Source: Penicillus capitatus (Eukaryota; Plantae; Chlorophyta). Taken from it: a DNA stretch of 64,000 nucleotides. Where the stretch lies: contig OZ287695.1 in the NCBI GenBank assembly GCA_965649825.1, forward strand, positions 682,001-746,000, read 5' to 3'. The position numbers and the translations under genes are program-made. Under the pieces are notes generated by a model that was not told the origin of the DNA, did no database searches, and was given only the letters and a program-made list of their open reading frames with translations. Below, piece by piece: positions 21,210-55,552 of this stretch (positions within the stretch are counted from its first letter, which is position 1; each line of letters begins with the position of its first letter).

Positions 21210-23971
21210 TCAAACACGCAGGAGTTCAGTGAGCCCCTCTCGAGCTTCATCCGTGCACTTGGCGCCGCTGTAACTACAGATACGATCGAACGGAATCTTG
21301 TTAAGTGTGTTTGTGCTCTTTTTGTTTGCCCCGGCTGCTACGAGCATCTGCTCAACATAATTAAAGCGACGGTTAACGCAATTGGCGACTAACCACCTTA
21401 GCCGATTGCAGTTTGCCGTAAGAAGCTGCCACATGCAACGGAGTCCCGAAGCGTTCGCTTGAAATCATTGCTTCGATATCTGCACCGTGCTCAAGGAGGA
21501 TCTTCAAACGTCTCCATCAGCGCGGTAGTCTGACACAAGCGTAATCTTACTCTTTGAAGGTCGATGTGTTCACGAGCGGCAGTTTCGTGCAACGGAGTCC
21601 AATTGCTGTCGATGGAAGTGTTGATGGAAGCACCGGCTTCGATGAGGATCTGCATCCCGTCATCTTTTAAGTGACAAAAGAATCGAAGGCGCGATTCTGA
21701 CCCTCGCAATCTGCACAGATCCGCGGTTTGCAGCTTTGTGCAGCGGTGTGAAACCACGTTTGTCAAAAACATCAACATCAGCCCCTCCATTGACGAGAAT
21801 CTTGCTCCAATGGCTTTTAGACAAAAGGCCGAACAAATACAAGACGAACTAACCTTCGCAATCTGTATGAACCCCTTTGCAGCTGCATCAAGAAGTGGAG
21901 AGAAGCCATCACTATCCCTGAAAACATCGAGGTCTGCGCCATAGTCGACGAGATACTTTCGAAAACTTTTTAACACGAAATTCAACACAGGCGCTGAGTT
22001 TACCTTTACGATGTTGACATGGCCTTTGTAGGTTGCTATGTGAAGTGGTGTCCAGTTGCGATCGTCAAAGACATCGGTGTCTGCTCCGTGATCAAGGAGA
22101 ATCTGCTTGCACGACAGATACTATGAGACATGAAAGATGTGTCACCAACTTTTGCGACTCGAGCACTATTAGAGGTCGCGGCTTCATGCAGAGGCGTATA
22201 GCCGTTAGCGCGCGTTATGTCAATTCCAGCGTCATGCTTCATCAACACCTACAGAGTGCCGCCATCTACGAGGAGTACAAAGGAAGTGTCAGCAACCTTT
22301 GCGACTTGATCGCTGTTGAAGATCGCAGCTTCATGCAGAGGCGTATTGCCGTTGGCACTCGGGATGTCAATTCCCGCGTCGTATTTTATTAAAATCTACA
22401 GAGCACAGCCAATCACAGAGAATCGACGACTCGAGGTATGTCATTCTGCAAATGTGTGTACTCTGCACAGGAGTCGATCATACCTGAGCACACTGCGCAG
22501 CGTCAAGCGCAGCAGCTGCATGCAGCAGAGTCGAGCGATCCGATTTCGGAAGTGACTGTACGTCTTTCTGTCCGTAGGTGGCGTTGACATGGAGACCGGC
22601 CAAGATGAGGGCCTCAGCGTCAATGGAGTTGTCCGACCGCATGACGCGGAGCATCTCCTGCAAAAAGACTAACTGTCCACTATTCGACTTTAGTGCAGTT
22701 TACTTCGATCATGGCCGATTCCGAGAACAAGGCATAGTGCTTCCGCCTCTCCATCAGCTTAATCTGGTGCGTCGCAACGCAGCTGGAACGCTGCGTACAT
22801 GTGTTGAAGACAAAGAGTGAATCTCGGATCTCACATCTTGATGACAATTGATGGTCCTTTCGATCCAATCGAGGAAATAGTCGACCCTCGTGTAGATGGC
22901 AGGCTCATCTCCGGAGCAAGCGTCGGCGTCGTCCCCCGCGTAGCCGAATGACGTGACGCCGACGATCATGTCCAGCTGCGGCTTCCCATCATCCATGCTT
23001 CCATATGGAGCGTCCATCAGCAGCAGCGGACCTCCTGAATCGCCTGCCACGCAACGCGGAACGTTGCTTGTAAGAGGGTGCAGCAGGGGTCAGTCCAGAT
23101 GACCTTTGCAGGTGTCCTCGTGCAGTCCTCCACCGCAGATCCAACTCGTTGGATCCACGCCTTGGGGCTGTGTTTTGCATTTATCTTGTCCGACAACGGC
23201 AAGATGACCCGCCACCTGCAGCTTCTTCGCGACGACGCCGTCTTTAGTCAGTCCCCATCCCGTGGCGCCAAGATATTGACCCTTCTCTAGGGGAACGTAG
23301 CCCGTGCCCAATCGCGGCAGCGTCACGTCCGCGTCTCTGTCGAGCTTCAGTACAGCCACGTCGTGTCCGCGTCCGACGTCGCCTGTCCACTTGGGGTGAA
23401 TGTATCCTGCGATCGCATCAAAGACCTGCAACAACGTGGCAGGCCTTGCTTCTGTCCGCGAGTGATTCGCAGCTACCTGGTGTTCTTCCGCCTTCTTGCG
23501 GTCGTGTATTCCGCAGTAGACGATGGGCGACAGACCGACGGTGGGGCGAACGTCGGGGTCCACGCAGTGAGCCGCCGTCAGGACCCAGTCGCGTCTGAAC
23601 AGCGTCGCCCCGCACATGTGGCGGCGAGTACCACGTTCTCTCAGGCTGCATGCGTAGGGAAATCTTCCAGGCGGCGCCGTCTTTCCTCTCTGTCAACCGT
23701 TGGCCTTGGAGTTCTGCGACAAAAACGTTCGAACGCTTACCACTATCTTTCCGAAGATGGTTGTGTTCGACTCGGAGCTCAAGTCCGCGTTGTTCAAGGC
23801 TTCACAGAAGTGACCGTCGTATGAATGCAAGTGTTTTAGGTTTTCCGCACCTTGAACGTCGACGGATGCCCATGCCGTCAGCAACAGCGACTGCAGCGTC
23901 AAGTTCGTCAGCGCGATGATCCATTTCTTCGAGCTGTGTGCTTGCGCGGAAGACCGACGAAGCGCGAACAT
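21210..23971 (-). CDS. S1 serine protease-ankyrin repeat fusion, member A (trypsin-type, D189)
   Basis: Spliced by eye in frame: hydrophobic leader, IV|RG N-terminus, TAAHC, HDVAVL, EDTCKG|DSGGP, linker, ~8 ankyrin repeats, C-cap PFDRICSYSGAKC...LLRV*. Confidence 0.82.
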
Positions 23972-24499
23972 CTTCTCCAACGAGAATGACGCTTAGATGC
24001 GAAAACAGTCAACCAGTCCCGAGTCATCTGTTTTACCGAATCGATCTCAATTCACTCTTACGTTAAACGGCATCGCCTTTTCGACTTGTCTTGCCGTTCA
24101 TCTCGTCATCGCAAAAACGCGCTCGACTACTGTTCATGGCCGACAGGACCAAAACACGTGAACAATCGACTACACAAGGCAGTTTGTCACTCCTTCCGTC
24201 GTCAGTGGGTCACGTCATCTGTCCAATCTCGAGTCATCATCAGCACTAAACCCTCAGTGCGATCTCACGGTGTAGCAATTCTTCTACCCCCATCGGAACA
24301 AAAGCTCTCCTCGCACTGAAAACTTCACATCGCGACAGAGACACGGTCATCATCATCATCGAAGACACATCTCGGAGTTCTCTCGCGACATGTCTATTCT
24401 CCATCGTCCTCTCAATCGATGAAACGTTTCAATCTATCTCGATGTACTTTCAGAAGCACTTTCCTACTCGAATCATCTCAAGGAACAAGGATTCTCAGC

Positions 24500-25450
24500 C
24501 ACTCTGTCGATCACTACGTATGGGTCTGCCCAAGGTAAGCCGAATCTGGCATCGGTTCTGCTCTTCTTCTTGGAATCATGAAGGATCACTCTTTAAACCA
24601 GTTGTCATTTAGTTCATCTTTGCCATTCCTTTGCATCTGCGCCCTGCCACTGCAGTGTCACGAATCTCGGCGTCATATCGATCTTCTACAGTATGGAGTT
24701 CATCGACAAGTCTTCATCGCCCAGCATCGTCAGTAAACCGATGTCTGCAGCTTCTGTCACGAGCATCAACACGTTAATGCTTCTTTCTTTTGCCTTGCTG
24801 GGTCTCTCGGCTGAACGCCATTAGCACGTTGTCTGACGATGTCTTGAGAAGCAAATGATGCAACGTTCAGACGGCATAGAGTCAGTACGCGATGGAGGTT
24901 AATACACCAATTTGCCTTGTTCTCCACCTTTGTTCTGGATATCCTCAACCAGAGTCCGATTGCATCTCTGGACCATCATCCCGTTGATTTGTCAGTGCGC
25001 TAGATGTCAAAAGTCGAGCTCATTGCTGCAAAGTATCTCCTGCAAAGAATCCTGCGCAAAGCTCGAAGCTTGATCAGCAGGTAAGAGACTCAGCTTGCCA
25101 ACACGTGATGCTGTCTCCGTCCTCGGCACCGCCTCCGCATTGGCTGCTATGCAATCGATTGTAATGGACGCTTCTGGTCATCTCGTGTGCAGGTAGATGA
25201 AGTTGACTGTACAATTGCTTCTCCGCCTTGTCACCGGCAACGGTCCGATGAAATCTGCCGTGAGGACCTTGAATGGCTCGACAACGACGTATTTCTTGCA
25301 GTTGCTTGATCGTGAGGTTGTTGACTTGGCCGACACATTCAACACATCTCTCCTGTTTCCGCACAGTCGCCACACAACTTCGGCCCCCAGTATTCACTCA
25401 TGATATGCAGCCGTTCTCTTGGGACAAATGTACCCGACTTCGCGAGCCAC
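24500..25450 (-). pseudogene. Decayed Ty3/gypsy integrase fragment
   Basis: PFKVLTADFIGPLPVT, an NG...RCNRTL segment and a GPY-like segment, broken by stops and frameshifts; no LTRs seen. Confidence 0.7.
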
Positions 25451-26660: not shown

Positions 26661-29343
26661 TCATGGACGCAGGAGTGTCTTGAGTGAAGATCGTGTCGAT
26701 TCAGAACACCTACTGTCTGTAGGAGGACAAATAACATCAAAAGGAGTTTCTCCCTTGTCGTTAGTTATCGTTTTCGAAGCTCCGGCATCGACCAGAATCT
26801 GTAACACAAGATTAAATTTCGAGATGGTGCCTCTGACTTGCCTCTGCCATCTCAAACTGACCATACCATGCTGCAAGGTGGAGCGGCGTGTCTCCATCGT
26901 CATTGACCAAGTTGACATCGGCATCTGCTTCGACCAACAACTGTAATAGACAAGGTGGAAAGGCAGACAGAAGCAAATTGGACGATTGCACCTTTACAAT
27001 CTCAGGCTCGATACGTTCCACGGCTACACGAAGTGGCGTATTTCCGTTCCGCCCGACGACATCGACCTTTGCTCCGTGCTCAATAAGGATCTAACAGTCG
27101 ACAGATTTTTCCAATGAGGTAATGAAGTGAATGAGCGAGAGACCTTGACCACTTTTACGTGTCTCAGTGACACTGCAGACAATAGAGGAGTATGTTCATA
27201 GGTATTGATGTTGTTGGTCTTTGCTCCGTGTTCAAGGAGTACCTATCCAGGCACTTGTCAAGAAATGCGGGAGCACATCATAACTCGCCTGTACAGTTTC
27301 CGGGTCTCCTTGGAACACAGCCTCGTGCAAGGGCGTTTGTCCCCTCTCATCAACTGCGTTTATGTCAGCGTCGTGATCCAGAAGAACCTGAGAACAAACG
27401 TCGGAGCAGACGGCTGGGATCGCGTTGTAAATTCACCTTCACCGTCTTTGTGTGTCGTCCGTACTTTACTGCCACATGCAAAGGTGTCAGTTTGTCGGTA
27501 CCGATGTCGTTGGCGAGCTTGTCAACAACTGCGCCATATTCCAGAAGAACCTTCAGATTGCAAGCACAAGGAGTCAGTGGACAAAGAACGACGTGTCTCA
27601 ACTCTGTAATTCAGAATGGATTCAGAGAAGCGCACTACCTCAATGCATTCTAACGCATTGTAAGTCGCCGACCAGTGCAACAAAGCAAAGCGGCCCTGTG
27701 AATGGACTGTAGTCGCCCCCCGTTGTACAGTAAATGCGGACTCGTAGAAAGAATCTGGATCAAGTTTCTCCAGCAAAGCGGCTTCCAACTTCATGGCATT
27801 ATCATGTCTTATGGAGATCACCGCTTCCTACAGAACCGTCTGTCTATTCACAGCGATCGTCATGTCGACGCAACCTTAATCAGCTCTTTCTGCGACAGTC
27901 CTGTAAGAAGTTTGCGCTCTTCTTCAATTTTCTGCTCCTCTGCCGGTTCCCTTTTCGTTTTCTCCTCTGCCGGTTCCCTTTTCGTTTTCTCCTCTGCCGG
28001 TTCCCTTTTCGTTTTCTTCTCTGTCGGTTCCCTTTTCGTTTTCTTCTCTGTCGGTTCCCTTTTCGTTTTCTTCTCTGTCGGTTCCCTTTTCGTTTTCTTC
28101 TCTGTCGGTTCCCTTTTCGTTTTCTTCTCTGTCGGGCGCTCTGTCTTTGGAATTCGTGTATCGCCTTTTCCATCTGCCGAAGGTGATTTGCGTGATTGTG
28201 GTCGATCTTTTTTCTGTTCGAGAAGATCAGACAGAAAGAAGCAAATGCGGAATACAGTTCACCTCTGAATCTTCGCCGATTTTCTCTTGAATCCAGTCCC
28301 AGAATGCACCGATACTTGTGTAGACGGACGGCGATTTAGCATCATCACAGTCTTCAGATCCCATAGACGTCACTCCGACAAGCAGGTCGAATTTTGGTTT
28401 CCCAGATGCGATGCTGCCTCCAAATCTGTTAGGAATCAACAGTGGACCGCCAGAATCACCTTCAACAGAGGAAGCTTGGCAGAGAGTAATGCTGTCAAGT
28501 ATTTAACCTTTGCAGGTGTTCTCACGCATTAGTCCAGCACAAATTGAGTGCTTCTTGATTGCTACGTTTAGAAGATCTTCGCATTCGCCATGTTTTACGT
28601 ATAACAGGTTTTCCGCCATCTGTAGTGAATTCGGAAGCTTTCCAGCATCGTCCAGTCCCCAACCCAGAGCAGTAAACACTTTCCCCCCGGGGAATTCTCC
28701 TTCCTGTGAATCTATCGACGGCAGTGTGAGATTTGCTTCTTCGCCTAATCTGACGACAGCGATATCGTATCCGTCGTTCACATCGCCCGTCCAAGATTCG
28801 GGCCAATAACTTTCCTCTCCACTAAACACCTAACAACCTTCCATCTTGGAAAAAAAGCGAATAGAGATGAAGAGGTTACTTTGTCGGGCTCGTCTGTGTC
28901 GAGGTCGTGAATGCCGCAACGAATAAGCGGATTTCTGCCGAGGCTTAACGGACAGGCAGGGTCGACGCAATGCGCGGCTGTGACGATCCACTGCTGTCGA
29001 ATGAGTGTTCCACCGCAGCGGTGAAATCCATCCTCTCGCGCCGAAAGACTGCAAACGTAGGGGAACCGTCCCTTGGGTGCCTCTTTACCCTGCGACAAGA
29101 ATGAGTGTTAAAACCTGAACTCGTTTGTGCTGCACAAACTCACGATGATGTAGGGAGCGAGTCGCGTCTTAGAGGCCGATGCTTCTGGACCGTTAACACA
29201 TAGACACGCGTCGGAAATTCCAAGCTGGCGATATTTTGTGTACCGTTTTTCTCTCGACATGGTGCTAGGTTGAAATGCATGAGAAGAAGTAGCAGAAAGA
29301 AATGATACCCGACTCGACAACGAGAAACAGAGAAAAGCTTCAT
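26661..29343 (-). CDS. S1 serine protease-ankyrin repeat fusion, member B (N189; a 1-nt frame discrepancy near 28208-28213)
   Basis: Signal peptide, II|GK, TAAHC, YDIAVV, ENTCKG|DSGGP, charged 9-aa repeat linker, ankyrin exons, C-cap PFDVICPPTDSRC...LLRP*. Fusion needs +1 nt in an A6 run or a different splice site. Confidence 0.72.
27936..28135. repeat. 27-bp tandem repeat, ~7.4 units of two variants (minus strand: EPTEKKTKR / EPAEEKTKR)
   Basis: Units start at 27936, 27963, 27990, 28017, 28044, 28071, 28098, with a partial unit at 28125. Confidence 0.93.
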
Positions 29344-32300: not shown

Positions 32301-33284
32301 TTCGTGTGATGTGCCGCAGCGTTGTTGCAGACGCTGAGAACGACGGGAGCTTTCTGATGCAAAGCTCAGAGTATTGGGAATAATCACTCACGACGATTCA
32401 TCTGTGTGTGTCTGGATCTGTGCTGAGCAATGTCGGCGAGGTCTCTTTCAGTCCATGTGTGAGGTGTCGAAAACAGCCGTTTGTTACAATTTCGACAAGT
32501 GATTATTTCCAGCGATAAGATGAACGTTTGATGTCGACGACCTTTTGTCTTCTTCTCTGAAATGTTCATCGGCTATCGGCGGCGTCCTGCGTAAGAGCCG
32601 GTTATACGGGTTTTGGAAGAGAGCGAGACTAGACTGGGTCGATGTGTCGACGTTTCCGCGACGACGATGATGTGACAGGCAGCTAAGGGGGCTCTCTCTT
32701 TCTGTCGATGCGCTATCAACGTCTTTTCGCCTTGATGTCGAAAGCTTTGCGCCTTTCCTTCGATGACATTGACGAGACGAGTGGACCCTTTTCTTTAACC
32801 GTTAGCTTTTTGACTACTGCGAGCCGTTGGAAGAGAAACGCTCATTAAAGCTTGACTTCGAAGGACAGATTTTAGTCATCATATCACACATGAACTGCGA
32901 GGTTCAACACCTGGCCTCGAATGCAGTACGGCCAGATAGATAACCATTCTTCGATCCTTCCTTATTTTTCATGTATGGTGTTTGCCGCCACACTCAGAAA
33001 GATCCGCCTACGATCGATTCTTTGCGCCAGAATCTTGAAACTTGTCGACAGCGCTTTGCATCGAGGAAACAGAAAAAAAACAAAAAGATAAGCTAATGAC
33101 AGCAAGCGACGCATTAAACGACGAACCAGGTAACAAGGCCGATTGAGAAAGGTCACTTTCGAAAAGGAATGCACGGGTACTAAGAGTCGCTTTCTATTTC
33201 AGAGCATTCCAGTAACAGCAGAGCGCGCCTAATACGGGCATCTGAGAAACACGTAGAGCAACGAAGGCGTCCACTCACTTGAGA

Positions 33285-36200
33285 CTACGTGCGGAATATT
33301 CCGTTGTTTCCATTCTGAATGTCTGCTCCGTCGACTGGTGTGACCATGAGCTGCGTCATTGACTGTTCTCTCGACGAGACGTTCCCCAACGTCATCTTTT
33401 CGTTTGACATGCAACAGGAATCTTTGATCTTCCTCAACGAAATCGCCAGACCCGCTGCAAAGAAGGAGGCGATCCACACAATCGGCCAGTGGTCTTCCAA
33501 GAAGAGAACGATGAGCGTAATCGCCATCTGCCAGATCTGCATTGGGGCACCAAACTTGACGAAATCGATGATCGTGTATCCGCCCGAAGCAAACACCATC
33601 AGGTTCGTCTGATACCCGAAGGGAGACATAAAGGCAGAGGACGCGCCCAGCATCAGCAACGCCGCCATGCGGTTCAGAGAGATGTCGTTCTCTGCGAAAC
33701 AGCACATCGGAACCGAACCGAGTGGAGACGTAGAAGTTACGTTTGGCGACGTTCATGGCAACGGGAAACATCAGCGCCGCCACTGCGTTGTTCGCCACGA
33801 GATTGGACAGCAACATCGTGGCGAAGTAGATGGCGAACATCACGAAGAAATTTCCTCCGATGGCTTTCCCTGCCAGACAGCGCCGCCGTTCGTTTCAGCC
33901 AGACTCAAGAATGGCACCTGCGGAGACCAGGCTGTCTGCGATGAGACTGGCAACGTCGCTGTTCTCGATGCCAGTGCTGACGCCAAACGCAGCAGCAACG
34001 GTGATGATGACATCCCACTTGACGGAGGCCCTGGCCTGCTCGCCCGTCAGGCACTGCGCCATCAGCATGATGGCAGACGTGATCAAAGCGGCGGTGATCA
34101 ACTCCACAAACGTGCGATCGAACGCCACGCCCACCAGCTGAGACAAGACCATCGCCGCCAGCGCCAGCATCGCCACCAAGGCGCGATCGAATCTGAAAAC
34201 AAAGATGCTGGACGGGGTCATCGCAGTGCACGGCACATCGCACCTTGGAGTGTGGCTATTGGCCACTTCCGAGACGAGGGCAAAATTCCGGTTGTTTCTG
34301 TTTTCGATAACGAACTGGGCACCCGTATCGAGAAGCAGAACATCGCCTCCTCGGAGGACGATGTCTCCAATCTTCTCCTTCAGTCGATGACCTTGGCGAT
34401 GGACACCTGCGTCGACGCCATCTCCTCCGCTCTCTCAGAGGCAGGCAACTCACCGATGATTGCTGCGTGGAATCGCGTGCGGAATCGACTTTCTCTCACT
34501 GTCTTTCCGGCCTGGTGACAACAGCACGGGAGCACAGGTTGAAAGAGGTGACGGTCCTGACCAGAACGGAGATCGGGGAGATGACGGCCTCGACGAGCCT
34601 TCTCTCTTGATGCGAGTGATTCAGCTTCTTCACTTGGTTTCCGTGCGGAACGAGACCGGCGATCTTTCGAAGGGAGGCGACACTCTCGAGCACTCCAGAG
34701 AACCAGAGAACATCTCCTGCCTCCAGAATCTCCGTCGGCGATACGGCCGGAATCCGATGACCCGTTCGGCGTTCGATCTCCACCAAGTACAGCTGATGCA
34801 GTCCGCGCAGACCTGCCTTCTCAATGGACTTGTTCACGAGCTACGTGGCACGTCATCAGCAGATGCCGGTGCTGGATGGGCACTTGACTGGGCCGCGGGG
34901 TTCGACTTCCATAGCCACCATGAACTCCCTCTCGGATTTGGCATCGGACTTCCTAATGTTAACCAGATTCGCCGTCACATCGTCTGAGTGTTCGTCGAAG
35001 GACTGAGAAAGGCAAGCAGTTTAGCCGAGCATTGAAGGGCGGACGGGTGGCTCACGGGGGAGCAATCGAGGACGAGGACGTCTTTGGCTTGCAAGATGAT
35101 TTTCCCCAGCGTCCCTGGGACCTTCTTTCCGTTTCTGGAGACAGCCAGAATAGCCTGAAAACAGAGGATCAGTGTCCAGAAATGCAAGCGGGTGCTTCTC
35201 AACAGCTTGGAATCTGGAACGAAAACCGACGTCTTTGACACTGTGTCCGACAACTGGAGCATCCTCTGCGATCTAATCAACTCTCGAAACTGAAGGAAAC
35301 TGTCTTGCGATGCGTTTCAGAGGACCTCTGCTTGTAACAGACGGTTAAGAGGGGCAACACTGGGACGGTCGAGCACGGGTGGCGTCTGTAGACTGGTGGA
35401 CGGGGGAATCCATTGCTGACGGTGGTATCGCTCAATCTCCTCGTTGAAGGCATTCGGAGAATTCAGCGACGGAGATCGTCGAACGGGAGAACCCAACAAG
35501 GCCGGCATCAATCTTGCACAGCACGGCATCAGTCCATGAGCTCAAGACACTCAGTGTCAGGACATACTGTTCGGTTTCGTCTGTAACGGGTCGCAGCGCA
35601 AAGGTGTCGACAAGGTTCTGCAGTCCGTCCATGACACCTGGCACCACATTATCGCCTCCGCGGCGCACGGAATGGAAGGCACCTGTGAAGTAGAGGATGT
35701 CCTGCGAAGCAATGACGAACTCTGGACCCACGGCACTGATGATGTGCTGTCCACGTCTGCCGGACAGTACGGTGCCTTAACTCGAGGCATGCTTCGAGCT
35801 CATACCTGACGGATGCGAGAAAGAGTCCATCTAGACCGCGCAGACCAGCTTCGTCGACCGTGCAGCCAACTGCACGCGAATGATCCGTGACCTCCAGTCC
35901 AACGAGGAAGGAACTCTGGGCATCTAGAAGAAGAGAAAGCTGGAAGGAGTGCATTGCAGCGTCTGCTCAACATTGCACTTGGTTTTGAGCGAGGCCAGGG
36001 AGAAGCAACGGAGAAAAGAGATACATGTAGATGAGTCCACCGACGGCGACGGGGACGCCGAACTTGCCGATGTCGAAGAAGCTCTGCTTGGGTATCTGCT
36101 CACCCTCTTCGGCACTTGCCGCCATGTCGTCAATCAGACCTAAAAAGCGCACAAACAAACGCGTTTCGTCTCGCACCCGTCGCCTGTGCACCTGCCACGA

Positions 36201-36831
36201 CCAGATTGGTCGACGTGCCGATCAAAGTGCAGGTTCCGCCGAGCATCGATGCGAAACTCAGTGGGATGTACAGCTGCAGGGAAGGCATCTGAACAGGGTT
36301 CGTCATCGAAATGGTGTGCCTACCTGTCCTGCAGGGAGATGGGATCTCTGGCACCACACCTTGACGATGGGAATCATGATGGCCACCACTGGTGTGTTGT
36401 TCATGAAGGCGGAGAGGATGGTCACGGGAAGCATCATGCGCATCATAGCCGACCCCGTATTCGTCGGATTCCCTAAGACGACTTGGAAGAGAGCGTCCAG
36501 ACATCCCGTTTCTGAGATGCCCATCGCCACAACGAAAAGCACTGGTGGAAAACGTCCATTGCCGACGCTTCGTCAATCGCCGGCTCACCTGCGACAGTCA
36601 GAGGTGCTTCGTTGGAGAATCCCGCCAGTCCCTCATCCACGCTGATGATGCGCGTCACCATGAGCACAGAGAGAACACCTATCGGCAAGAACGTTATCCA
36701 TCTGCTTGAAGAAGAAGGGACGGCTGACCTAAGAAAACGAAATCTGCGCCCGCCCAGTCTTTGAAGAGAATGACAATCGCCACGACGATGCATAGAATAG
36801 CAACGGCAGAATCCAAACCAAACTCAGCCAT
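33285..36831 (-). CDS. SLC13/CitMHS-family anion transporter with TrkA-C domains (SAC1/SLT-like sulfate transporter type), multi-exon
   Basis: Motifs LAGFSNEAPLTV, SAFMNNTPVVAIMIP, PLSFASMLGGTCTLIGTSTNLVV, TrkA-C segments (GLRGL..LYLVEIER), VANNAVAALMFP, SSAFMSPFGYQTNLMV and DFVKFGAP. Confidence 0.9.
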
Positions 36832-41024: not shown

Positions 41025-42230
41025 ATGCTTCTCAAACGCGTTCTGGTGTTTATTGTACTCTCAATGCTCTTTAATGTCTCTTCTTGCCGGTTTCATCGTG
41101 GCACCCGACGCAGTTTTGGTAAGGAAATCCCAAAAAACCTGACTCCGAAGACACCGAAGATCTCACTCCCTCCTGCTGTTACTGGAATCCCTAAAGGCCT
41201 GACACCGAAGATCTCACTCCCTCCTGTTGCCACGGGGGGAGTTCCTGTCGACCTGACGTCGAAGACGCCGAAGACCTCACGCACTTCTTCTATTACGGCA
41301 GTCCCTGGAGGTCTGATTCTAACGAAATCAACAACCACTGTTTCTAGCGCGCGAAAGTCCAAACGCCGTTCCAAGACATCCGTGGACCGTATTGTGGATC
41401 CAGCGAAGAAGACGTCGAAGAAAACGAAAACAGACCAGCCAAGAAACGGAGAACGAAAAGACATAAAGACAGAATGCAACCTTGTCGAGAAAGGTTACGC
41501 GATCTACAGCTGTGTCAGCGAAACCGAGATGTATTGCAATGGATGGTCGACGAAACGCGTGAAGCTGGAACGATGTCATTGCGCGAAGTAGAGGAGGCCC
41601 CGTCTCACCGTGTGCTCAACAAAGTGGTGTCAGGAAGATCAGTGCAACCTCGACAGTGATGTCTGTCACTCGAAGGACATCCCGATCAAACCGACAAATT
41701 GCAGATGCGAGAATCCGTCCTCTGATGGGACGTATTGCGAGCAATGGAGCTGCATCGAGTCCATCACGGGAAGGGACTATCGCTGCTCAGAGAACCACGA
41801 CAGCGGCCTCTTTTGTTTTGAGTGGGAAGGCAACAGCACTGTGAATGATTCGAAGAAATCTCCTGGCTGTTTTTGTCTCGGCGTCGAAGGAGATTCTTTC
41901 TGCAAAGAGTGGTGGTGCGGCGATGCCGGAATCAAAATCGACTGCCGAGAAGGCAACGGCAAAGGCAAACGCAGGAACAAGAAATCCGATTAAGATGCCT
42001 ACAGAGGGGGACTGTGCTTTTCTTTTTTTCGTCGTAAAAGACATCTTAACGTTGCTTGAAAGATTCTGGGAGTATGGTATTACAAGATGGCTTACAGCTC
42101 CAAGGGTGTGGGTTCATTGCCGTTTGGTGTGGGGCTCTTGGGTGTGACCGCATTTCGTTCTAACATGAGCCGTCATCTGTTGCAATTACCTGCAGTGTTC
42201 TGACGCCTCAGTTGCGTTACTGGAGAAGGA
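41025..42230 (+). pseudogene. Cys/Trp-rich family member with Pro/Thr/Lys-rich N-terminal extension, disrupted
   Basis: Signal peptide MLLKRVLVFIVLSMLFNVSSC resembles member 3. In-frame TAG at 41589-41591, modules continue to TAA at 41993, then frameshifted TM remnants. Confidence 0.7.
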
Positions 42231-43870: not shown

Positions 43871-44444
43871 CGTAGACCGCGTTTCGCCATTAATTTTAAT
43901 CCGGTCAAGTGAAGAGGAGAAAACAGATAAACCACCACTGTGCGTCAGACTGAGGAAATAGTCTACCTGGCATGGTGTCGATTTAGCTTTGGTTCTCTGC
44001 TTAAGAATGCTGTTAACTCAGGTTTATGCGTCCGAAAATTTTCAGTCACTGCAAATGCAGCTCAATTACTGATTTGAGTTTAGAAACATCTACGCTTGAC
44101 AGTTCAATTATTGGTTTTCGTTTAGGAACATCCACGCCTCATTCGATTCTTGTCCAAATAAACGATTCATGAATTCGTTCTAACTGGTAGATAGAGTGTA
44201 CGATACTCTTGTTGATTTGACCCTTCCAAACAAGTCTGTTGTTATACTGTAAATGTTACATCTCCAAGTTTACGCGACTCGTAGCTTCTCGAAAAAAATG
44301 GTCTTGACGTGTCCAGCTTCCTCCGTCCGCTTCGGGGAAACTGTTCTCGCACTTTTTTGGCTATAAAGCCGGCGATAGTGTTTGCGTACAAACTGACTTA
44401 TTTCTTTTTTCTCGGCGAAGGTTGACGTTCCTGTTTTTGTTTTG

Positions 44445-45446
44445 ATGCTTAACCGACGTGTTCTAACGATTCTTATACTCTCTAAGCTCTTCGGTGTCGC
44501 GTCTTGTCAGAGGTCGGTTGTCTTCACCAGGAGGACTCTTTCCAACAGAAAGGCGCAGTACAAACCAAGCCGGCATTCACTAGGAAACGATGATTCGCCA
44601 TTGCTTGAAGAGGACAGTTCGAGTCCGTGTCGGTCAGTGTCCAAAACAGAACACCGTTGCCTCGAAAAGAACAAAACGTTGTGCACGGAATGGTCGACAG
44701 GAGAATTAGAGCGAGGACGTTGCTTCTGTTGCCACCAAAGCGGTCTCTATTGCTCTCTCTGGATTTGCCCTCATAAGGGAATCGAACCTAGCACCACTCA
44801 CCATAACCGTGATCGCTGCATCGAGATATCTGAAAACACCACCAGATGCAGCTGTTTCAATGCATCCTCGAAGAAGGACTATTGCGAAGAGTGGTACTGT
44901 ACCGAGTCCGCCGTAGACGGAAGTCTGCAATACGAGTATTACAGCTGCCAGGAAGCAAACAAGAGCAGCGGCATTTGTCTCCACTGGAAAGAAGACATTC
45001 GTGAGAATGGAGATGGCGAATCGTCCGACTGTCACTGCAAAAGGAAAGGAGATGGCTTCTGCAAACGGTGGAACTGCACCAGACGCGCCCGGTGTCCTGA
45101 CGACGAAGAGCACCGTCACTCGATGGTCTGGTTGATAGCAGGAGGCGGTGGACTTCTGTTCTTCGCTGCGGGTTGGATCCTGGCGTACGACGAAGAATTC
45201 CTCAAACATTGGTACCCCAAAGGCTGCTTGGCGCTCGGACTGTTGTGGTTCATCGCTGTTTTCCGTTATGGGGCTACCCAACTGTGGCCGTTTTTCGTCG
45301 TAGGATGGGTGCTCATCATGTTTATTCCCTACCTCGTTCTGAAGACTCGGTCTTGGTTGCTGAAAAAGAACGCGACAAACCAGGAGTCATCAGACGGAGG
45401 ACAAACGCCTCAGAATGAAACAGAAAGCGATTGCACCAACGATTGA
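44445..45446 (+). CDS. Cys/Trp-rich membrane protein, member 3
   Basis: Intact ORF with signal peptide, modules LCTEW, YCSLWIC, YCEEWYC, ICLHW, FCKRWNC and three hydrophobic segments. Confidence 0.85.
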   Translation: MLNRRVLTILILSKLFGVASCQRSVVFTRRTLSNRKAQYKPSRHSLGNDDSPLLEEDSSSPCRSVSKTEHRCLEKNKTLCTEWSTGELERGRCFCCHQSGLYCSLWICPHKGIEPSTTHHNRDRCIEISENTTRCSCFNASSKKDYCEEWYCTESAVDGSLQYEYYSCQEANKSSGICLHWKEDIRENGDGESSDCHCKRKGDGFCKRWNCTRRARCPDDEEHRHSMVWLIAGGGGLLFFAAGWILAYDEEFLKHWYPKGCLALGLLWFIAVFRYGATQLWPFFVVGWVLIMFIPYLVLKTRSWLLKKNATNQESSDGGQTPQNETESDCTND

Positions 45447-48786: not shown

Positions 48787-49743
48787 TCAAATTGTGCTCA
48801 CTCTCGTCGGACGGCAGACAGCGATCCACAGAGGCAGCAGCAGAGCAAAGAACCATAGAGCTCCGACGATGGGCAGCGCACGAACTCCGCCCCAAATGAC
48901 CACTCCGATCATCATGAAAAGCGCTGGAATGCTGAGAGGCAGAGCCAAGTGTGGTTCTTCCATCAGCAGACTGAAAGTCGAGGCAGCGATGATGATGAAC
49001 ACAGCGACGCCGCCGCCACCCAAAACAGCAACCCAGTAATTGCACCACCAACCGGAATGCCCCTCGCAACGAACCATTCCTCTCATCTCACAGGACCAAT
49101 CATCACAGAGTGTCTCGTTGGTCGACTGGCATCGGCAGACAACGGACTTGATCTTCTTTTCCGACGAGATCTGACCTTTCCACCACTCGCAGTAATCCTC
49201 TCTGTTGGTACTGTCGCATTGGAAATGCTGCTCTTCGAAGTCGCCGTCATAGTCGAGCTTCACACAGAACCATTCCAAACAGTACTTTGCATTTTCGGTC
49301 TTGCTACACCAGCAGCGTCTCTTTTCCATCCGCGAATCTTCATCACAGGTGCTCTCGGCATCTGCCGAGCAGTTAGATGCCAAACTGTGATTGCATGACC
49401 AGTTGTCAATGGCGTTCGGTTCGGTCCAGCACGCGATGGACTCTTCTCCTCTGTCCGTGCTGTTTCCCATACCCGTCCAGTTGGTACAGCGGTTCGCCGC
49501 GCTGGCATGGCAAATGTAATGTTCTTGGCCTTCGATTTCGGCTTGGGTGTATATGCCGCCGCGGTACTCACCGGAATTTTTATAGTAGCCTGCCCTGCGT
49601 TTCAGCATCGGCACGGAATCCACTTCCGTATCTCCCTTTTCTGTATCGGTTTCGGAATTGAGCTCCGTATCCACGTGTTCCATACAGGCGACGAAGACCC
49701 ACGGCACCAATGCCAAGAGAGGTAGCACAAGGAGCATGCGCAT
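48787..49743 (-). CDS. Cys/Trp-rich membrane protein, member 4
   Basis: Intact 318-aa ORF; LKRRAGYYKNSGEYRGGIY matches LKRQTGYRTESGRYRGGLY of members 1/2; same modules and TM tail. Confidence 0.87.
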   Translation of the reverse strand: MRMLLVLPLLALVPWVFVACMEHVDTELNSETDTEKGDTEVDSVPMLKRRAGYYKNSGEYRGGIYTQAEIEGQEHYICHASAANRCTNWTGMGNSTDRGEESIACWTEPNAIDNWSCNHSLASNCSADAESTCDEDSRMEKRRCWCSKTENAKYCLEWFCVKLDYDGDFEEQHFQCDSTNREDYCEWWKGQISSEKKIKSVVCRCQSTNETLCDDWSCEMRGMVRCEGHSGWWCNYWVAVLGGGGVAVFIIIAASTFSLLMEEPHLALPLSIPALFMMIGVVIWGGVRALPIVGALWFFALLLPLWIAVCRPTRVSTI

Positions 49744-50232: not shown

Positions 50233-53200
50233 TTATGCAGCGGGCAGTGTCGTCGAAGTCGTCAGCAGTTCCCTCAAATGAGAACGGGTCTGGTCGGAGC
50301 ACTCGGCGTCACGGGCAGTGCAGATCAGATCCAACGGGATCTCGCCGTCATCGTTCTTTTCGGAGACGGACGCGCCGACACCCACAAGAATCTGAACACG
50401 GCAATCTCGAGTGCATCACAGTTAAGAGTGAATGGACCTTTGCGGTCGTCAGATGTCCTTGGCTGGCTGCCATGTGCAGTGCCGTCCACCCCGTTTCCTC
50501 GGCAGCATCAACTTCTGCTCCCTTGTCCACGAGCACCTGAATCGACGGCCTCTCTGTTCAGCGAACACAGAGAGACGCGATGAATCGGCGTACCTTTACG
50601 GCGTCGTCATGTCCGTCGAGCGATGCGTAGTGTAGCGCTGTCCAGCGAAGGAGATTCGTTGCGTCAACCTGGGCGCCGTGAAGAAGCAGATCCTGTGGGG
50701 AAGGCCATGGAAAGAGAAACGCTGAGGGCTGCGCGAAGGTACCTTGACGATTCGGGCGTCCCCCACGAGTGCCGCAAACTGCAGCGGTGTCGTGCCATTT
50801 TCCAATGCGGTGGCCACGGCAGCACCGCCGTCGAGAAGTGCCTGCCGAGCGGACACACATCGAAAGAGCGACGGCGTGGCGACACTCACTTTCACGATGT
50901 CCGTTCGATCGATATATGTCGCCAAGAACAGCGCCGTGTAGCCATTTGCATCTGCGGCGTCGACATCGGCATCGTTGTCGAGCAATACCTGTCACGAGCC
51001 AAGCAAGAAAGACAGCGTGGTCAATCGATGGCTCACCTGAACGGTCTCCAGGTGTCCCTGAACCGATGCCAGCATCAAGGGCGTCCATTGATCGCGTGAC
51101 CATTCATTAACGTCGGATCCATGCGCAATGAGAATCTGCATGCTGCCCCTTTCGGCAGGCAACGTATAAAGAAGATCAGAGGCATACCTGTACAATGTCG
51201 TCGTGTCCACGTTTCGATCCTTCGTGCAATGCCGTCCAGCCGTTGCTCTTGGGAATTCCGGTGTCCGCGCCGCTATCGAGCAGAAACTGGACATGACTCG
51301 GCAGCTGTCTCGCCTGTCCAGAGATGGCTAACGCACTTGCACGACCTCTATGTCGCCGGTGGATACGGATCGATACAAGGGAGTCTCTCCTTCCTCGTTG
51401 ACAACGTTCAGCTTGGCCATCCGCGAAACGAGGATCTGCAGAAACTCAGCAGTGGATGCAAGAACTCAGAGTCCTTGTTTATACTTTTGTCATCTTGAGA
51501 TGGCCTTCGCCGACAGCCTGATGCAAAGGGGTGTCGCCATTTCTGTCGACGGCATTGATATCTGCTCCCTCGTCCACAAGAACCTTCAAGGGAAGGCAAA
51601 GAACAATGAGATACATGCATGGTCCGAATGACAATGACCTCAGCGCATTGCACAGATCCGATCGCAGTGGCCAAGTGCAACAAGGTCGCGCCCTCGGACA
51701 GATCTGGGATTCCCTCTTCAACGGCATGAAAGCATTTGGAATCAGGCTCGAGACCCGATCGCAACACGGCTCTGGCCACTTGGCCATCGTCTTGTTTCAC
51801 TGCTTTCACCATTCTCTGGAGGAATGGCATCAGATGACATAGCTCTTGAGTGACGACCTCACCAGACAGAGCTGCTCAGGAGAAAAGCCATCCAGCGCTT
51901 TGGCCATTATCTCAACCTCCTTGCTACCGTGTATCTCCTCCGTCAAATCCAGCGGCTCATCTTCCTAAACGAAACAGAAATCGCGTTGCGCGATGATCTG
52001 TGTTTGAGTCTGCAGCGACGACGCAGAACGTGTCTTAAAGACAAAAGATTCCAGAAGGGCAAAGAGAGCCGGAAAACGTGGACGGGCAGATAACAGCGTA
52101 GAGATTGCGTGAGGAAACGACAGCAAACCTCGAGTGCTTTGTCGTCGATGGTGTCGGCGATCCATTGCGAAGCATATCGGACACTGGTGTAGATTCCCGA
52201 TCCTTTGCCGTTTCCTGAAGACGCATTTCTCTCTGTGAAGCCGACTGGAGAGATCCCGATGATCAGGTCCTCGGCCGGATCTCCCCTCGCCAAGTCTCCC
52301 TTCGGTCGATTTGCGAGCAGAAGCAGAGCACCGGGCTTGACCGAAACTACACAAACGAGGTATACAGGAGTCCATGCAGAACAGGAGTCCGCTGCAATCT
52401 ACCGCTGCATTCTTCCTTGCAGCAACTGCGTACGCATACCAGGCTGTCTACTGGACCCAAAAACGCTGACGACGGGCTGCATTCTTCGCTGTCACATAGA
52501 GTGGTCGAATGGACGGTACGCCATTTGCTGAGGGAACCCTTCCGTTTTGTGGCCTCCCAATCGACAGAGGACAATCGCATGTCCGTTCTGAGAGGCATTC
52601 CTTCTCGAAGAAACCTCGGCAATGGCACCTTGGCTTTCTTATCTATCCTCAATACAGCTAGATCATGACCGTCGGCAGCATTCCCGGTCCAATCCACGTG
52701 CATCCGCGTTTCCACAACGTGAAATGTCTGTGAGACGAAAGGCGCATGACGCTGTTGTTGTTCGCCTTATTGAACGAGGCTCGCCTTCTCCGAAGACATC
52801 CCATCGGATGGGGGTAGTCCGCAGTAGACGAGAGGATAGAAGCCGACTGATTTCGGATAATCAGGGTCAACACAATGTGCCGGGGCTAGCATCCATCTTT
52901 GGCGAATGAGCACAGCAGTGCACATGTGCTTTCGGTTTCCTGCCCTTCTCAGACTGCACAAGTAAGGAAAACGCCGGGCATCGACTTTTTCGGCTCCTCG
53001 ATGCGAGCGACCATTTGCATAGCGGCTGCTATTTGGCATACGCCATTGCGATAAACCTGTCACTTCTTCTTCAACGGCACGCGGAAGAAAAACGCTTCGC
53101 AGTTCACCGTCTGCACAAGGGCAAACAACATTCGAAGGGAGAAGTAGGTTCCGTACGCGCGGTACTTGAACGACAGCGCGATGAATGTGGTGAGAAGAGC

Positions 53201-53238
53201 AATAGGAACAGCGACAGAAGTTCAAATCTCAGCTTCAT
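50233..53238 (-). CDS. Protease-like (catalytic Ser absent)-ankyrin repeat fusion, member C
   Basis: Signal peptide MKLRFELLSLFLLLFS; APAHC and HDLAVL are kept, but at the conserved phase-1 intron GDSGGP becomes VSVKPGA. Eight consecutive 99-nt ankyrin exons; C-cap PLDLICTARDAEC...LL. Confidence 0.82.
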
Positions 53239-53893
53239 GTTGACAACAGACAGAGCAGCACAGTCGGTCAGATGAACGCGTAAACCCGCGTGCAATCGGC
53301 AGGCGCTGTCGACGTCGGAGCGTAGTGCTGCTCGTCGACGAACGCGGCAGCCAGAGTACAAACCGTCTAACTGTTAACCTTCGAACCAGTCTCTCTTCAC
53401 TGTCTCAAGGCATCATGCGTGAAGGCAGAGGCAAGAAAAGTTCAGCAGGAGAGAGACTCTGGAGATTGACATTGAGGGTATGGTGTCATGCACAGATGAC
53501 CATCAGTTTTTTCCTTTGATTTACAAAGATTGTTTATCCGTTCCTCCTCAATGAGACACTTGTTGCTTTTGTTTGTAAAGGAAAGGAGAGCATCGCTCAA
53601 GAAAGAAAACTGGTCCACGCTCTGTCAGCTCTTTCGAGGAAGATTCGGAGTGTTCTGCAACAGCCATTCTTTCAAAGGCAGATAGATGATCAGTAAGAGG
53701 CCGGCTACCCACTATCGCATCTCTTGCCGCTGTCGATTCGCTCGAGTCAAAAGACGTACGTCTCTGTATACGGTTTTCGAAGTACGATTCGAGTTTTTGC
53801 TGTTGGACGGCTGAGACAGAAGGTTCACGTTCTGCTGCTCTTTTGTAACCAAAAGACGAACAAGCGAGCGTCGAAAGCTCTCCGTGGAAGACA

Positions 53894-55552
53894 ATGAAGA
53901 TTCTTGTCTCTATCCTTCTTTTTATTTTAGCCGGAGATTTCTCCGTCCTCTGCACTCGCCGTAAGGCATCGACCGGCGCCGCCACACGGCCGAACACGCA
54001 TTCTCTGCTTGGTCAGGTCATGATGACTGGAACACCCTCGGTCGACGCGCGAACCCTTCCCAGTTGACGACGACGCACCATTCAGATTCGCCCGTGTTCA
54101 ACCGAAAGGTAACCAAGAGGCTGCCCGCACAATCTCTGCTTACCTCTGCTGGCGAGTGCAGAGTATTACAAGCGAAGAGAGAAGGGAACAGCTGTCCGTG
54201 ACGGAGTCGGTCGAGTACGGAGAACTCACGGACGAAGCACGCATCCTGGTGTACCCTCGCACATCGTCTGTGTCGATATGCGCCCTGCTATTTAGGAAGC
54301 GGTCTCCGCCATCGAGCGAGACGACGCAACGAGCCTCGCTGCGTTGATTCGTGCAGGTCTGGATGTCAATGCGACGCACTCAGAGCCGGAAGGGTATGAC
54401 TACTCTCCCGACGAGATTCCATCGCTGCTGCACTGGGCGTTGGGCTTCGAGGCCATTGAATGCGTCAAGGCACGTCCATTCCTTTGTTGTTTCTCCCGAC
54501 TCAGAAACTGTCTCTGGGTCGAAGGTCCTCACGAGTGAAGGAGCGGACGTCGATTCCACAACTATGTGTTCGTTCACACCGCTTCACGATTCCGTCCTGA
54601 TCGATTCGAAGGAGATAGCACAGGTTCGTCCTTGGAACATACATCTCTCTACATATGACACTACCCGTTACTGCACGAACCGCACGCGACAAGTGTGACC
54701 TTGCGACCGGAGTTCGTCCTCCTTCGCGTTCCGATACGAGACGGATCGCGCATGTGGATTTCCTTGGACGCAGTCACCAGTTCCCCAACGGGATCTTGGT
54801 CCCTTGACGCAGCTGCTCGTGGATGTGTTCAGGTTCTCTTTATGGCCGGCGCCAACATGGATGCGAAGGACTACTTGGACAGGACGCCTTTGCATCAGGC
54901 AGCCCATTACGGGTACAGCGACATGACAGAGGTCTTGTCCTTCTTCTCTTGCACTCAATCATCTGTATGTAGCAGTTTCTCATCGAACGGGGCGCTAACA
55001 TAAGTGCGATAGACGACAGAGGACGTACGCCTCTGTTCCTCGCGGCGGTTTACGGGAACCCTGACGTTGTGGAGGTCAGACGAAACCACTCGCGCTCTGT
55101 TGAAGTCGTCGCCTCGTAGGTTCTCATCGGGAGAGGGGCAGACGTCAACGTCAGCGACACACAAGGCTGGACGCCACTGCACTACACAGCACTCTACAAC
55201 GACGTTGACACGGTTCGGGTAAGATCGCCGGCAAATAGGCGTCCGTAACGTGCGGTCGGCCAGGTCCTTCTCGATTCCGGCGCAGACGTTGGTACCAAGG
55301 ATTACGCCTCGGAGCAGACGCCACTGCATATTGCGTCGGCAGGAGGTTGCCTCGAAGTCGCACAGGCAAGACGCATGCGACGCGCGCGATCCTGCGATCG
55401 CGTTTTTGTAGATTCTAGTGGAAGCCGGTGCATCGAAGACCATCACGGATCGTTTTGCCAATACACCAGGCTACTACGTTTGCTCTTCCGCATTCTTTCT
55501 CAAATGCAGTGTCGCAACTCGCGCCGCTCTTGTCGAACTGCTGACTCCTTAA
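53894..55552 (+). CDS. Predicted secreted ankyrin-repeat protein without protease domain, member D
   Basis: MKILVSILLFILAGDFSVLC signal exon, pro-exon, linker exon (GELTDEARIL|EAVSAIERDD), ankyrin exons, C-cap YVCSSAFFLKC...LLTP*; in frame when spliced. Confidence 0.8.

What the first reader, a model, noticed from the sequence alone, without database searches (positions are those of the whole stretch)
21210..55552. Family of predicted secreted trypsin-fold protease-ankyrin fusion proteins (best candidate for an undescribed system)
Seen: genes at 21210-23971, 26661-29343 and 50233-53238 each place an S1 protease directly upstream of ankyrin exons. In members A and C the splice junctions join them in frame (HQD|RSS...SAMIE|EMLRVM; ALE|EDEP...QLCL|RMVKAV). 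All start with hydrophobic leaders. A fourth member (53894-55552) and two pseudogenes share the same linker, N-cap and C-cap. Established: S1 proteases are typically secreted zymogens, whereas ankyrin repeats are overwhelmingly intracellular binding scaffolds. Inference: this is a modular extracellular protease whose variable ankyrin array picks its targets, like a recognition-plus-effector system. I do not recognise this architecture as characterised, but cannot search to confirm.
Basis: partly seen in the sequence, partly recalled or inferred. Interest (0 to 1): 0.85.

Follow-up and report, generated by a model that had tools for sequence, protein, structure and literature searches.

The report
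Algal secreted trypsin-ankyrin fusion gene family
The window, from a siphonous green alga or a close relative, carries four intron-rich genes for signal-peptide proteins that tether a trypsin-type protease (active, dead or absent) to an ankyrin-repeat array; the family is real and shared with Bryopsis and Ostreobium, but nobody has studied it.

Summary
The observation largely holds. I built complete in-frame spliced models for three minus-strand genes: A 23971-21210 (691 aa), B 29343-26661 (681 aa) and C 53238-50233 (723 aa). Each reads hydrophobic leader, propeptide, Pfam Trypsin domain, linker, N-cap, 5-8 ankyrin repeats and a C-cap with two invariant cysteines. D (53894-55552, +, 352 aa) has the same leader, linker, ankyrin array and C-cap but no protease.

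A and B keep the His/Asp/Ser triad. C has lost the catalytic serine motif (GDSGGP to SVKPGA) and is a pseudoprotease.

The two "pseudogenes" are decayed ankyrin relics outside the stated range, and no C-cap was detected in them.

The same fusion occurs in at least 14 Bryopsis sp. KO-2023 genes, in Ostreobium quekettii (UniProt A0A8S1JBT6), in a related metagenome contig, and as uninterrupted ORFs on transcript-sized contigs. So the protease-to-ankyrin junction is not a gene-model artefact.

Best reading: secretory-pathway S1A zymogens joined by a flexible linker to an ankyrin binding module. Secretion and target selection are inferred, not shown.

No paper describes the architecture, though the Ostreobium genome paper reports an S1 peptidase expansion. 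This is a new variant of a known kind, of moderate interest.

The parts
21210..23971 (-). Gene A, 14 exons, 691 aa. Leader and propeptide exon 23971-23741. Protease exons 23689-22835, with TAAHC, D102, GDSGGP and D189. Linker exon 22790-22704. N-cap exon 22657-22484. Seven ankyrin exons 22395-21397. C-cap exon 21347-21210.
   Evidence: Spliced model with 13 GT-AG introns of 44-88 nt. Pfam Trypsin residues 76-316, E 1.5e-36, plus ankyrin families. Alignment to elastase and matriptase, E about 5e-22.
26661..29343 (-). Gene B, 13 exons, 681 aa. Leader exon 29343-29244. Small exon 29184-29144. Protease exons 29089-28263. Linker exon 28213-27875, holding the 27-nt tandem repeat TEKKTKREP (about 8 copies). 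N-cap exon 27827-27639. Five ankyrin exons 27550-26842. C-cap exon 26798-26661.
   Evidence: Spliced model with 12 introns, two of them GC-AG. Pfam Trypsin residues 48-281, E 3.2e-38, plus ankyrin families. The intron 29243-29185 that joins the leader is my inference.
50233..53238 (-). Gene C, 15 exons, 723 aa. Leader exon 53238-53166. Protease-like exons 53110-52129: His57 and Asp102 are kept, GDSGGP is replaced by SVKPGA, and Cys220 is lost, so this is a pseudoprotease. Linker exon 51964-51863. N-cap exon 51815-51639. Eight 99-nt ankyrin exons 51583-50438. C-cap exon 50391-50233.
   Evidence: Spliced model. Pfam Trypsin partial, profile positions 3-168 of 220, E 2.5e-9, plus strong ankyrin hits. 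Family alignment.
53894..55552 (+). Gene D, 10 exons, 352 aa: leader, linker, N-cap, five ankyrin repeats and a two-cysteine C-cap, with no protease domain. It lies head-to-head with C, with 655 bp between the two start codons.
   Evidence: Spliced model with 9 introns, two of them GC-AG. Pfam finds ankyrin families only. C-cap and N-cap hits by tblastn.
11743..12560 (-). Decayed ankyrin pseudogene relic: an N-cap-like exon preceded by a frameshift, an ankyrin exon with an in-frame TGA, and a terminal ankyrin fragment. It lies outside the finding's range.
   Evidence: tblastn. Three-frame reading.
63564..63671 (-). Second copy of the same ankyrin relic, inside the segmental duplication 62826-64000 (matching 11079-12239, 90.6% identity). 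It is cut by the window end.
   Evidence: tblastn. Self-blastn.

Best explanation
These genes belong to a family so far named only in siphonous green algae (Bryopsis, Ostreobium), plus unnamed relatives in environmental assemblies. They encode secretory-pathway chymotrypsin-fold (MEROPS S1A) zymogens with an ankyrin-repeat solenoid attached to the C-terminus.

Proposed mechanism:
1. The N-terminal signal peptide takes the protein into the ER.
2. A short propeptide is removed at the conserved (K/R/aromatic)|I/V-x-G site. In A this is K|IVRG. The new N-terminus activates the protease in the usual S1A way.
3. A flexible low-complexity linker tethers the catalytic domain to a rigid array of 5-8 ankyrin repeats. 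The array has its own N-cap and a probably disulfide-locked C-cap.
4. The ankyrin array binds a protein partner through its variable concave face. It therefore acts as an exosite or anchor that brings the protease to particular substrates or places.

The family also holds a catalytically dead member (C) and a protease-less member (D). These probably bind the same kind of partner without cutting it, as regulators or decoys.

Each ankyrin repeat is one phase-0 exon, mostly of 99 nt. Exon duplication, loss or skipping therefore changes repeat number without breaking the frame.

Shown: the gene structures, the domain content, the catalytic residues, the family conservation and the faster divergence of the ankyrin part in most recent Bryopsis paralog pairs. 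Inferred: secretion, activation, partner binding and the biological role (external protein degradation, defence or wound response).
For: - In-frame models for A-D, with Pfam Trypsin and ankyrin hits.
- A and B keep H57, D102, S195, GDSGGP and the cysteines of the three core S1A disulfides. A has D189/G216/A226, a trypsin-like pocket.
- All members have N-terminal hydrophobic leaders, no internal TM-like stretch and no retention tail.
- Two C-cap cysteines are invariant in 20 aligned family members.
- The same architecture is found in Bryopsis and Ostreobium quekettii CAD7703549.1. A colinear ortholog of A lies on ENA contig L001.
- Single uninterrupted ORFs of 757 and 596 aa lie on 2.6 and 2.4 kb contigs.
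- 12 of 27 selected top representatives of this protease clade carry ankyrin repeats.
- The AlphaFold2 model of homolog P0001 shows two confident domains (pLDDT mostly above 85) joined by a disordered linker at residues 282-317, with pTM 0.58.
- Repeat positions 13, 14, 10, 17, 2 and 33, mostly on the canonical binding face, are the most variable across 21 exon-repeats.
- Recent Bryopsis paralogs are 93-95% identical in the protease domain. Their ankyrin parts are 58-61% identical in two of the three pairs, and repeat counts differ.
- A sister protein, P0418, carries a different C-terminal repeat module instead of ankyrin repeats.
Against: - No signal-peptide predictor, transcript or proteomic data exist for the window's own genes.
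- A's leader is only weakly hydrophobic (best 8-residue hydropathy 1.75) and could be a signal anchor.
- B's leader joins the protease only through an intron that I inferred.
- Ankyrin repeats are rare outside the cytosol.
- One predicted Ostreobium paralog (P0427) has a TM-like stretch between the protease and the ankyrin repeats. That would place the ankyrin part in the cytosol.
- Faster ankyrin divergence may simply reflect relaxed constraint.
- The structural model is of a homolog 35% identical to A, not of a window protein.
Confidence: 0.55

Rival explanations
1. Bulk external digestion. These are ordinary secreted digestive proteases, part of the S1 expansion reported for Ostreobium. The ankyrin array only anchors or stabilises the enzyme, for example on the cell wall or the substrate matrix, and does not select targets.
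For: The Ostreobium genome paper reports 189 S1 peptidase genes, about 40% with signal peptides, and reads this as expanded external protein degradation. The protease domains are typical S1A.
Against: It does not explain why a dead-protease member (C) and a protease-less member (D) keep intact ankyrin arrays and C-caps. It also does not explain why the ankyrin parts diverge faster than the protease domains in recent Bryopsis paralogs.
Confidence: 0.2
2. Stored, wound-activated enzymes. The proteins sit in the vacuole or in vesicles of the giant coenocytic cell. They meet their targets, cytosolic proteins recognised by the ankyrin array, only when the cell is injured and compartments mix.
For: The named relatives with this fusion (Bryopsis, Ostreobium) are siphonous green algae, known for wound plugs and regeneration from extruded cytoplasm (abstract listed). 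Ankyrin repeats usually bind cytosolic partners (general knowledge). The proteins look like leader-bearing zymogens.
Against: This is pure inference. No vacuolar sorting signal was identified and there are no expression data. The Bryopsis genome paper does not mention these genes.
Confidence: 0.12
3. The ankyrin array is an intramolecular latency or folding module. It masks or chaperones the protease and is cut off at the linker.
For: The linkers are disordered in the model. B's linker is a Lys/Arg-rich repeat that a trypsin-like enzyme could cut.
Against: D and C keep the ankyrin array without an active protease. No confident interdomain packing is predicted (pTM 0.58). The C-cap is at least as conserved as the protease domain among the window's paralogs.
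Confidence: 0.08
4. Membrane topology or gene-model artefact. Either the protease and the ankyrin parts are separate genes, or a missed TM exon places the ankyrin repeats in the cytosol.
For: One Ostreobium gene model (P0427) has a hydrophobic stretch between the two domains. There are no transcripts for the window itself, and splice-junction searches found nothing.
Against: There is no stop codon, start codon or leader between the domains in A, B or C, and no TM-like window in any linker. Homologs on transcript-sized contigs have uninterrupted ORFs. Bryopsis gene models show the same fusion.
Confidence: 0.05

Closest known systems
Uncharacterised trypsin-ankyrin proteins of Bryopsis sp. KO-2023 (e.g. 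BSKO_04794, 04805, 04809, 04609, 04685, 04697, 04699) and Ostreobium quekettii (CAD7703549.1 / UniProt A0A8S1JBT6)
   Same: They share the order leader, S1A protease, low-complexity linker, ankyrin array and Cys-containing C-cap. They share family motifs (GRFPY.CSL, TAAHCV, WTG.V..G.D) and the insertion after GDSGGPLL. They are 30-36% identical over most of the length. They also occur in gene clusters, with head-to-head pairs.
   Different: Most Bryopsis C-caps have four cysteines, against two in the window's genes. Bryopsis has G at position 189, against D (A) or N (B). The intron inside each ankyrin repeat sits about six codons later in Bryopsis. None has a described function.
Chymotrypsin-family serine proteases (MEROPS S1A), e.g. 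pancreatic elastase and matriptase
   Same: The fold, the catalytic triad, the GDSGGP and TAAHC motifs, the core disulfide cysteines, and zymogen activation producing a new N-terminus starting I/V-x-G.
   Different: Animal mosaic S1A proteases carry their binding modules (CUB, EGF, kringle, LDLa, clip) N-terminal to the protease. Here the module is C-terminal and made of ankyrin repeats.
HtrA/DegP proteases (S1C protease plus C-terminal PDZ domains)
   Same: They work alike in outline: a trypsin-fold protease followed by a C-terminal protein-binding module that recruits substrates.
   Different: They belong to a different subfamily, have no zymogen activation, use PDZ domains rather than ankyrin repeats, and form oligomeric cages. 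No PDZ domain was detected here.
Serine protease homologues (catalytically dead S1 domains, e.g. arthropod SPHs, haptoglobin)
   Same: Member C keeps the fold-defining motifs, His57 and Asp102, but has no catalytic serine.
   Different: C carries an ankyrin array rather than a clip or CCP domain. Its partner is unknown.
Latrotoxins (secreted spider-venom proteins with long ankyrin arrays)
   Same: They are a precedent for ankyrin solenoids working outside the producing cell. The ankyrin part of the family model matches their structures (ranks 39, 40 and 48).
   Different: They have no protease domain, act by forming pores, and are unrelated apart from the repeats.

Membership tests
Peptidase family S1A (chymotrypsin fold) | Pfam PF00089 match above the gathering score | tested here: met
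   A 126.8 bits, B 132.2 bits, C 37.7 bits; cut-off 20.6.
Peptidase family S1A (chymotrypsin fold) | Catalytic triad His57, Asp102, Ser195 with the TAAHC and GDSGGP motifs | tested here: met
   Met for A and B. Not met for C: APAHC and D102 are present but GDSGGP is replaced by SVKPGA. C is therefore a pseudoprotease.
Peptidase family S1A (chymotrypsin fold) | Conserved disulfide cysteines C42-C58, C168-C182 and C191-C220 | tested here: met
   All six cysteines align in A and B. C lacks C220. Formation of the bonds was not tested.
Peptidase family S1A (chymotrypsin fold) | Zymogen activation site that produces an I/V-x-G-x N-terminus | tested here: inconclusive
   A has K|IVRG and B has Y|IIGK. 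C has SHRG and no such site. Cleavage itself is not testable here.
Peptidase family S1A (chymotrypsin fold) | Peptidase activity | not testable with these tools
   Needs recombinant protein and substrate assays.
Ankyrin-repeat proteins | Tandem 33-residue repeats matching PF00023 / PF12796 with the TPLH and GAD/N framework | tested here: met
   A-D have E-values from 1e-39 to 1e-88. Across 21 exon-repeats L23, T6 and L8 are invariant. The model of homolog P0001 shows a regular helix-pair solenoid that matches AnkB, AnkR and DARPins.
Secreted / secretory-pathway proteins | Cleavable N-terminal signal peptide | tested here: inconclusive
   A hydropathy and (-3,-1) rule heuristic only. B, C and D have strong h-regions (best 8-residue hydropathy 3.1-3.3). 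A is weak at 1.75 but has an AWA|S site. No SignalP was available.
Secreted / secretory-pathway proteins | No further TM segment, no ER-retention signal and no GPI-like tail | tested here: met
   No 19-residue window above 1.6 outside the N-terminus in A-D or in 8 homologs. The C-termini are LLRV, LLRP, LPAA and LLTP.
Type II transmembrane serine proteases (matriptase family; among the best PDB sequence hits) | N-terminal signal anchor, stem domains, and the protease at the C-terminus | tested here: not met
   The protease lies directly after the leader and propeptide. No SEA, CUB or LDLa domains are present, and the extension is C-terminal.
HtrA/DegP (S1C) | C-terminal PDZ domain(s) and the Trypsin_2 type of protease domain | tested here: not met
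   No PDZ hit. PF13365 scores are below its cut-off (27.0 and 20.3 bits against 27.6).

The most novel reading that the evidence does not exclude
The family is a diversifying recognition-plus-effector system of giant coenocytic algae. Disulfide-capped ankyrin arrays, rebuilt by exon duplication and loss, would serve as variable recognition modules outside the cytosol. They would be coupled to an active protease, a dead protease or nothing. Together they would form a proteolytic defence or wound-response network comparable in logic to arthropod protease / protease-homologue immune cascades.
Probability: 0.15. Interest if true: 0.8.

Novelty: new variant of a known kind. Interest (0 to 1): 0.5.

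Why it matters
- Ankyrin repeats are the classic intracellular binding scaffold. A conserved family of at least 20 genes in at least two named algal genera puts them behind a signal peptide, with a Cys-containing cap, on the C-terminus of a zymogen protease. That would be a natural counterpart of engineered DARPin-enzyme fusions.
- It could give a concrete molecular handle on the large S1 protease expansion reported in Ostreobium, and on wound, defence or feeding biology in siphonous algae.
- RNAi now exists in Bryopsis (papers listed), so the function can be tested.

Tried and rejected
- Exact look-up of my models A-C in the 15-billion-protein collection: none present.
- Profile search with the last repeat plus C-cap, to find other N-terminal domains attached to the same cap: it returned only short ankyrin fragments and was uninformative.
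- Search of JGI metagenome contigs for the two spliced junction 24-mers of gene A, as a test for transcripts: no match.
I modelled homolog P0001 instead.
- Fold search of that model: only ankyrin-only chains among the 50 best matches listed, and none covered both domains.
- Literature searches for trypsin and ankyrin in Bryopsis, Caulerpa, Ostreobium or algae: no description of the fusion.
- Rfam and tRNA scans of the window: nothing found.
- Considered and rejected: a separate-genes artefact, a TM segment hidden in a linker or intron (checked for C's 164-nt intron), and membership of the TTSP or HtrA families.


Full report
**What the window is.** It is eukaryotic DNA of about 50% G+C with no tRNA or Rfam hits. 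Its genes are split by very short introns. Motif scans of the six-frame translation found two TAAHC/GDSGGP pairs and many TPLH ankyrin motifs on the minus strand at 21-29 kb and 50-52 kb, and on the plus strand at 54-55 kb.

**Gene models.** I read the three frames and chose GT/GC-AG introns that keep the frame open. This gave four complete models.
- Gene A, 23971-21210 (-): 14 exons, 13 introns of 44-88 nt, 691 aa.
- Gene B, 29343-26661 (-): 13 exons, 681 aa.
- Gene C, 53238-50233 (-): 15 exons, 723 aa.
- Gene D, 53894-55552 (+): 10 exons, 352 aa.

The 48 introns comprise 43 GT-AG and 5 GC-AG. Every internal ankyrin repeat is one phase-0 exon of 99 nt (a few are 102, 105 or 114 nt).

Its linker exon contains a 27-nt tandem repeat encoding TEKKTKREP about eight times. 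Joining B's hydrophobic leader to the protease frame needs a 59-nt intron (29243-29185). I inferred that intron by analogy with the other members.

**Domain content.** Pfam finds Trypsin plus five ankyrin families in A, B and C, and ankyrin families only in D. The Trypsin hit in C is partial. The protease domain of A aligns with elastase, matriptase and kallikrein at E about 1e-21, which places it in S1A.

A family alignment shows the following.
- A and B keep His57, Asp102, Ser195 and the cysteines of the three core disulfides. Both have an I/V-x-G start after the propeptide.
- A has Asp189, a trypsin-like pocket. B has Asn189.
- C keeps His57 and Asp102, but GDSGGP has become SVKPGA, GWG has become DWE, and Cys220 is lost. 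Its ankyrin array and caps are intact. C is therefore a pseudoprotease.

**Targeting features.** A hydropathy heuristic finds one hydrophobic segment at the N-terminus of every member and none elsewhere. No member has a KDEL or GPI-like tail. The C-cap motif (P.D.IC......C[ST][DE]....L..LL) is shared by A-D and their homologs, and its two cysteines are invariant in a 20-sequence alignment. Together with the retained S1A cysteines, this fits a protein that folds in the secretory pathway. It is not proof, and no signal-peptide predictor was available.

**How many members.** tblastn with the separate modules finds exactly three protease domains and four C-caps in the window. At low stringency the only further pieces are two ankyrin relics, at about 11743-12560 and 63564-63671. 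They lie in a 90.6%-identical segmental duplication. They carry an N-cap-like exon, a frameshift and an in-frame stop.

**Relatives.** Searches with A returned the same architecture in several sources.
- Many Bryopsis sp. KO-2023 proteins, most of them on one 7.4-Mb contig.
- Ostreobium quekettii CAD7703549.1 (UniProt A0A8S1JBT6).
- Environmental sequences P0001, P0071 and P0126.

A nematode protein (P0012) also has both domains but lacks the family's caps. I take it to be independent or a model artefact.

Further evidence from the fetched loci:
- A 1.67-Mb ENA metagenome contig (L001) holds a colinear ortholog of A. Its protease, its N-cap (VQEMLRALREDNSLDAEALLLAGLYVN...) and its ankyrin exons lie in the same order.
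- In Bryopsis two family genes lie head-to-head, as C and D do here. Each ankyrin repeat is again roughly one exon there, but the intron lies about six codons later.
- P0001 and P0126 are single uninterrupted ORFs of 757 and 596 aa on contigs of 2587 and 2409 nt, with short flanks. Genomic copies have 12-14 introns, so these contigs look transcript-derived. That is the best available evidence that the two domains are translated as one protein.

A full HMMER scan with a profile of the protease clade found 3788 proteins at E up to 1e-30. I scanned 27 of the top 150 representatives with Pfam, chosen for one or two matched protease stretches. Twelve of them carry ankyrin repeats. One sister protein (P0418) has a different Cys-rich repeat module after the protease, with a weak DUF346 hit. 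One Ostreobium model (P0427) has a TM-like stretch between the two domains. The window's genes have none.

**Structure.** The model has mean pLDDT 83.8.
- An N-terminal helix (the leader) and a disordered propeptide.
- A confident protease domain at residues 42-282.
- A disordered linker at residues 282-317.
- A very confident ankyrin solenoid at residues 320-720, and a moderately confident C-cap.
- pTM of 0.58, so there is no confident packing between the two domains.

The protein therefore looks like a tethered two-module enzyme. The 50 best PDB fold matches listed are ankyrin-only chains, and none covers both domains.

**Variability.** Across 21 exon-repeats of A-D the framework positions are fixed. 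The most variable positions (13, 14, 10, 17, 2, 33) are mostly those of the canonical binding face. Within the window the paralogs are old: protease domains are 30-43% identical, ankyrin arrays 33-39% and C-caps 38-51%. In recent Bryopsis paralogs the protease domains are 93-95% identical. The C-terminal parts are only 58-61% identical in two pairs. In the third pair they are 92% identical but differ by about two repeats. The ankyrin module therefore changes faster than the enzyme, by substitution and by repeat gain or loss.

**Interpretation.** The best-supported reading is a family of secretory-pathway S1A zymogens whose C-terminal ankyrin solenoid acts as a binding module, either an exosite or an anchor. 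Dead-protease and protease-less members would act as non-cutting binders.
- Shown: architecture, catalytic residues, conservation, modularity and faster ankyrin divergence.
- Inferred: secretion, activation, partner binding and biological role.

The Ostreobium genome paper reports the S1 expansion, with about 40% of the genes carrying signal peptides, and reads it as external protein degradation. It never mentions ankyrin repeats. The Bryopsis genome paper mentions neither domain. No other paper found describes the fusion.

**Verdict.** The finding is a real, conserved but uncharacterised variant of a well-known enzyme family. Its sequences are already in public databases. It is of moderate interest. 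Interest would be higher if the ankyrin arrays prove to be diversifying extracellular recognition modules.

Noticed in passing
window 4583-9853: Intact Ty3/gypsy-type LTR retrotransposon. The LTRs at 4583-4923 and 9513-9853 are 100% identical. One ORF (4977-9407, +, 1476 aa) carries gag, aspartic protease, RT, RNase H and integrase domains. It looks like a recent insertion into one copy of a segmental duplication.
   Followed up: partly
window 1-4276 vs 57193-61454; 11079-12239 vs 62826-64000; 12586-14980 vs 40807-38412 (inverted): Large segmental duplications of 90-92% identity frame the locus. One of them is inverted.
   Followed up: partly
window 13690-14691(-), 38701-39708(+), 44442-45446(+), 48787-49743(-); partial 41025-41591(+): Four intronless paralogs of a protein of about 330 aa, interleaved with the trypsin-ankyrin genes. 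Each has a hydrophobic leader, a Cys-rich ectodomain-like region and a hydrophobic C-terminal region. None has a Pfam match.
   Followed up: partly
window, introns at 27288-27243, 26841-26799, 52784-52728, 54470-54524, 55366-55411: Five of the 48 modelled introns use GC-AG rather than GT-AG, about 10%. This is far above the roughly 1% usual in eukaryotes (general knowledge). All five are needed to keep 99-nt repeat exons or conserved motifs in frame.
   Followed up: no
window 27930-28140 and 10150-10530: Coding tandem repeats. A 27-nt unit forms the Lys/Glu/Thr-rich linker of gene B. A second, unrelated tandem repeat array lies at about 10.15-10.53 kb.
   Followed up: no
L002 (Bryopsis BSYQ01000004.1) 10001-14897: In the Bryopsis homolog each ankyrin repeat is also about one exon. 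The intron falls after ...AG|A rather than after ...VAK|IL as in the window. This points to intron sliding or independent intron gain.
   Followed up: partly
P0418 (JGI metagenome protein, 665 aa): This protein has the same protease clade, but the protease is followed by Cys-rich repeats of about 45 aa (weak DUF346 hit) instead of ankyrin repeats. The clade may therefore accept different C-terminal binding modules.
   Followed up: partly
window 16478-17230(+), 19675-20184(+), about 33200-36600: Other genes in the window: a ubiquitin-domain fusion ORF, a weak BTB-like ORF, and weak CitMHS-type transporter similarity in an ORF at 33229-33843.
   Followed up: no
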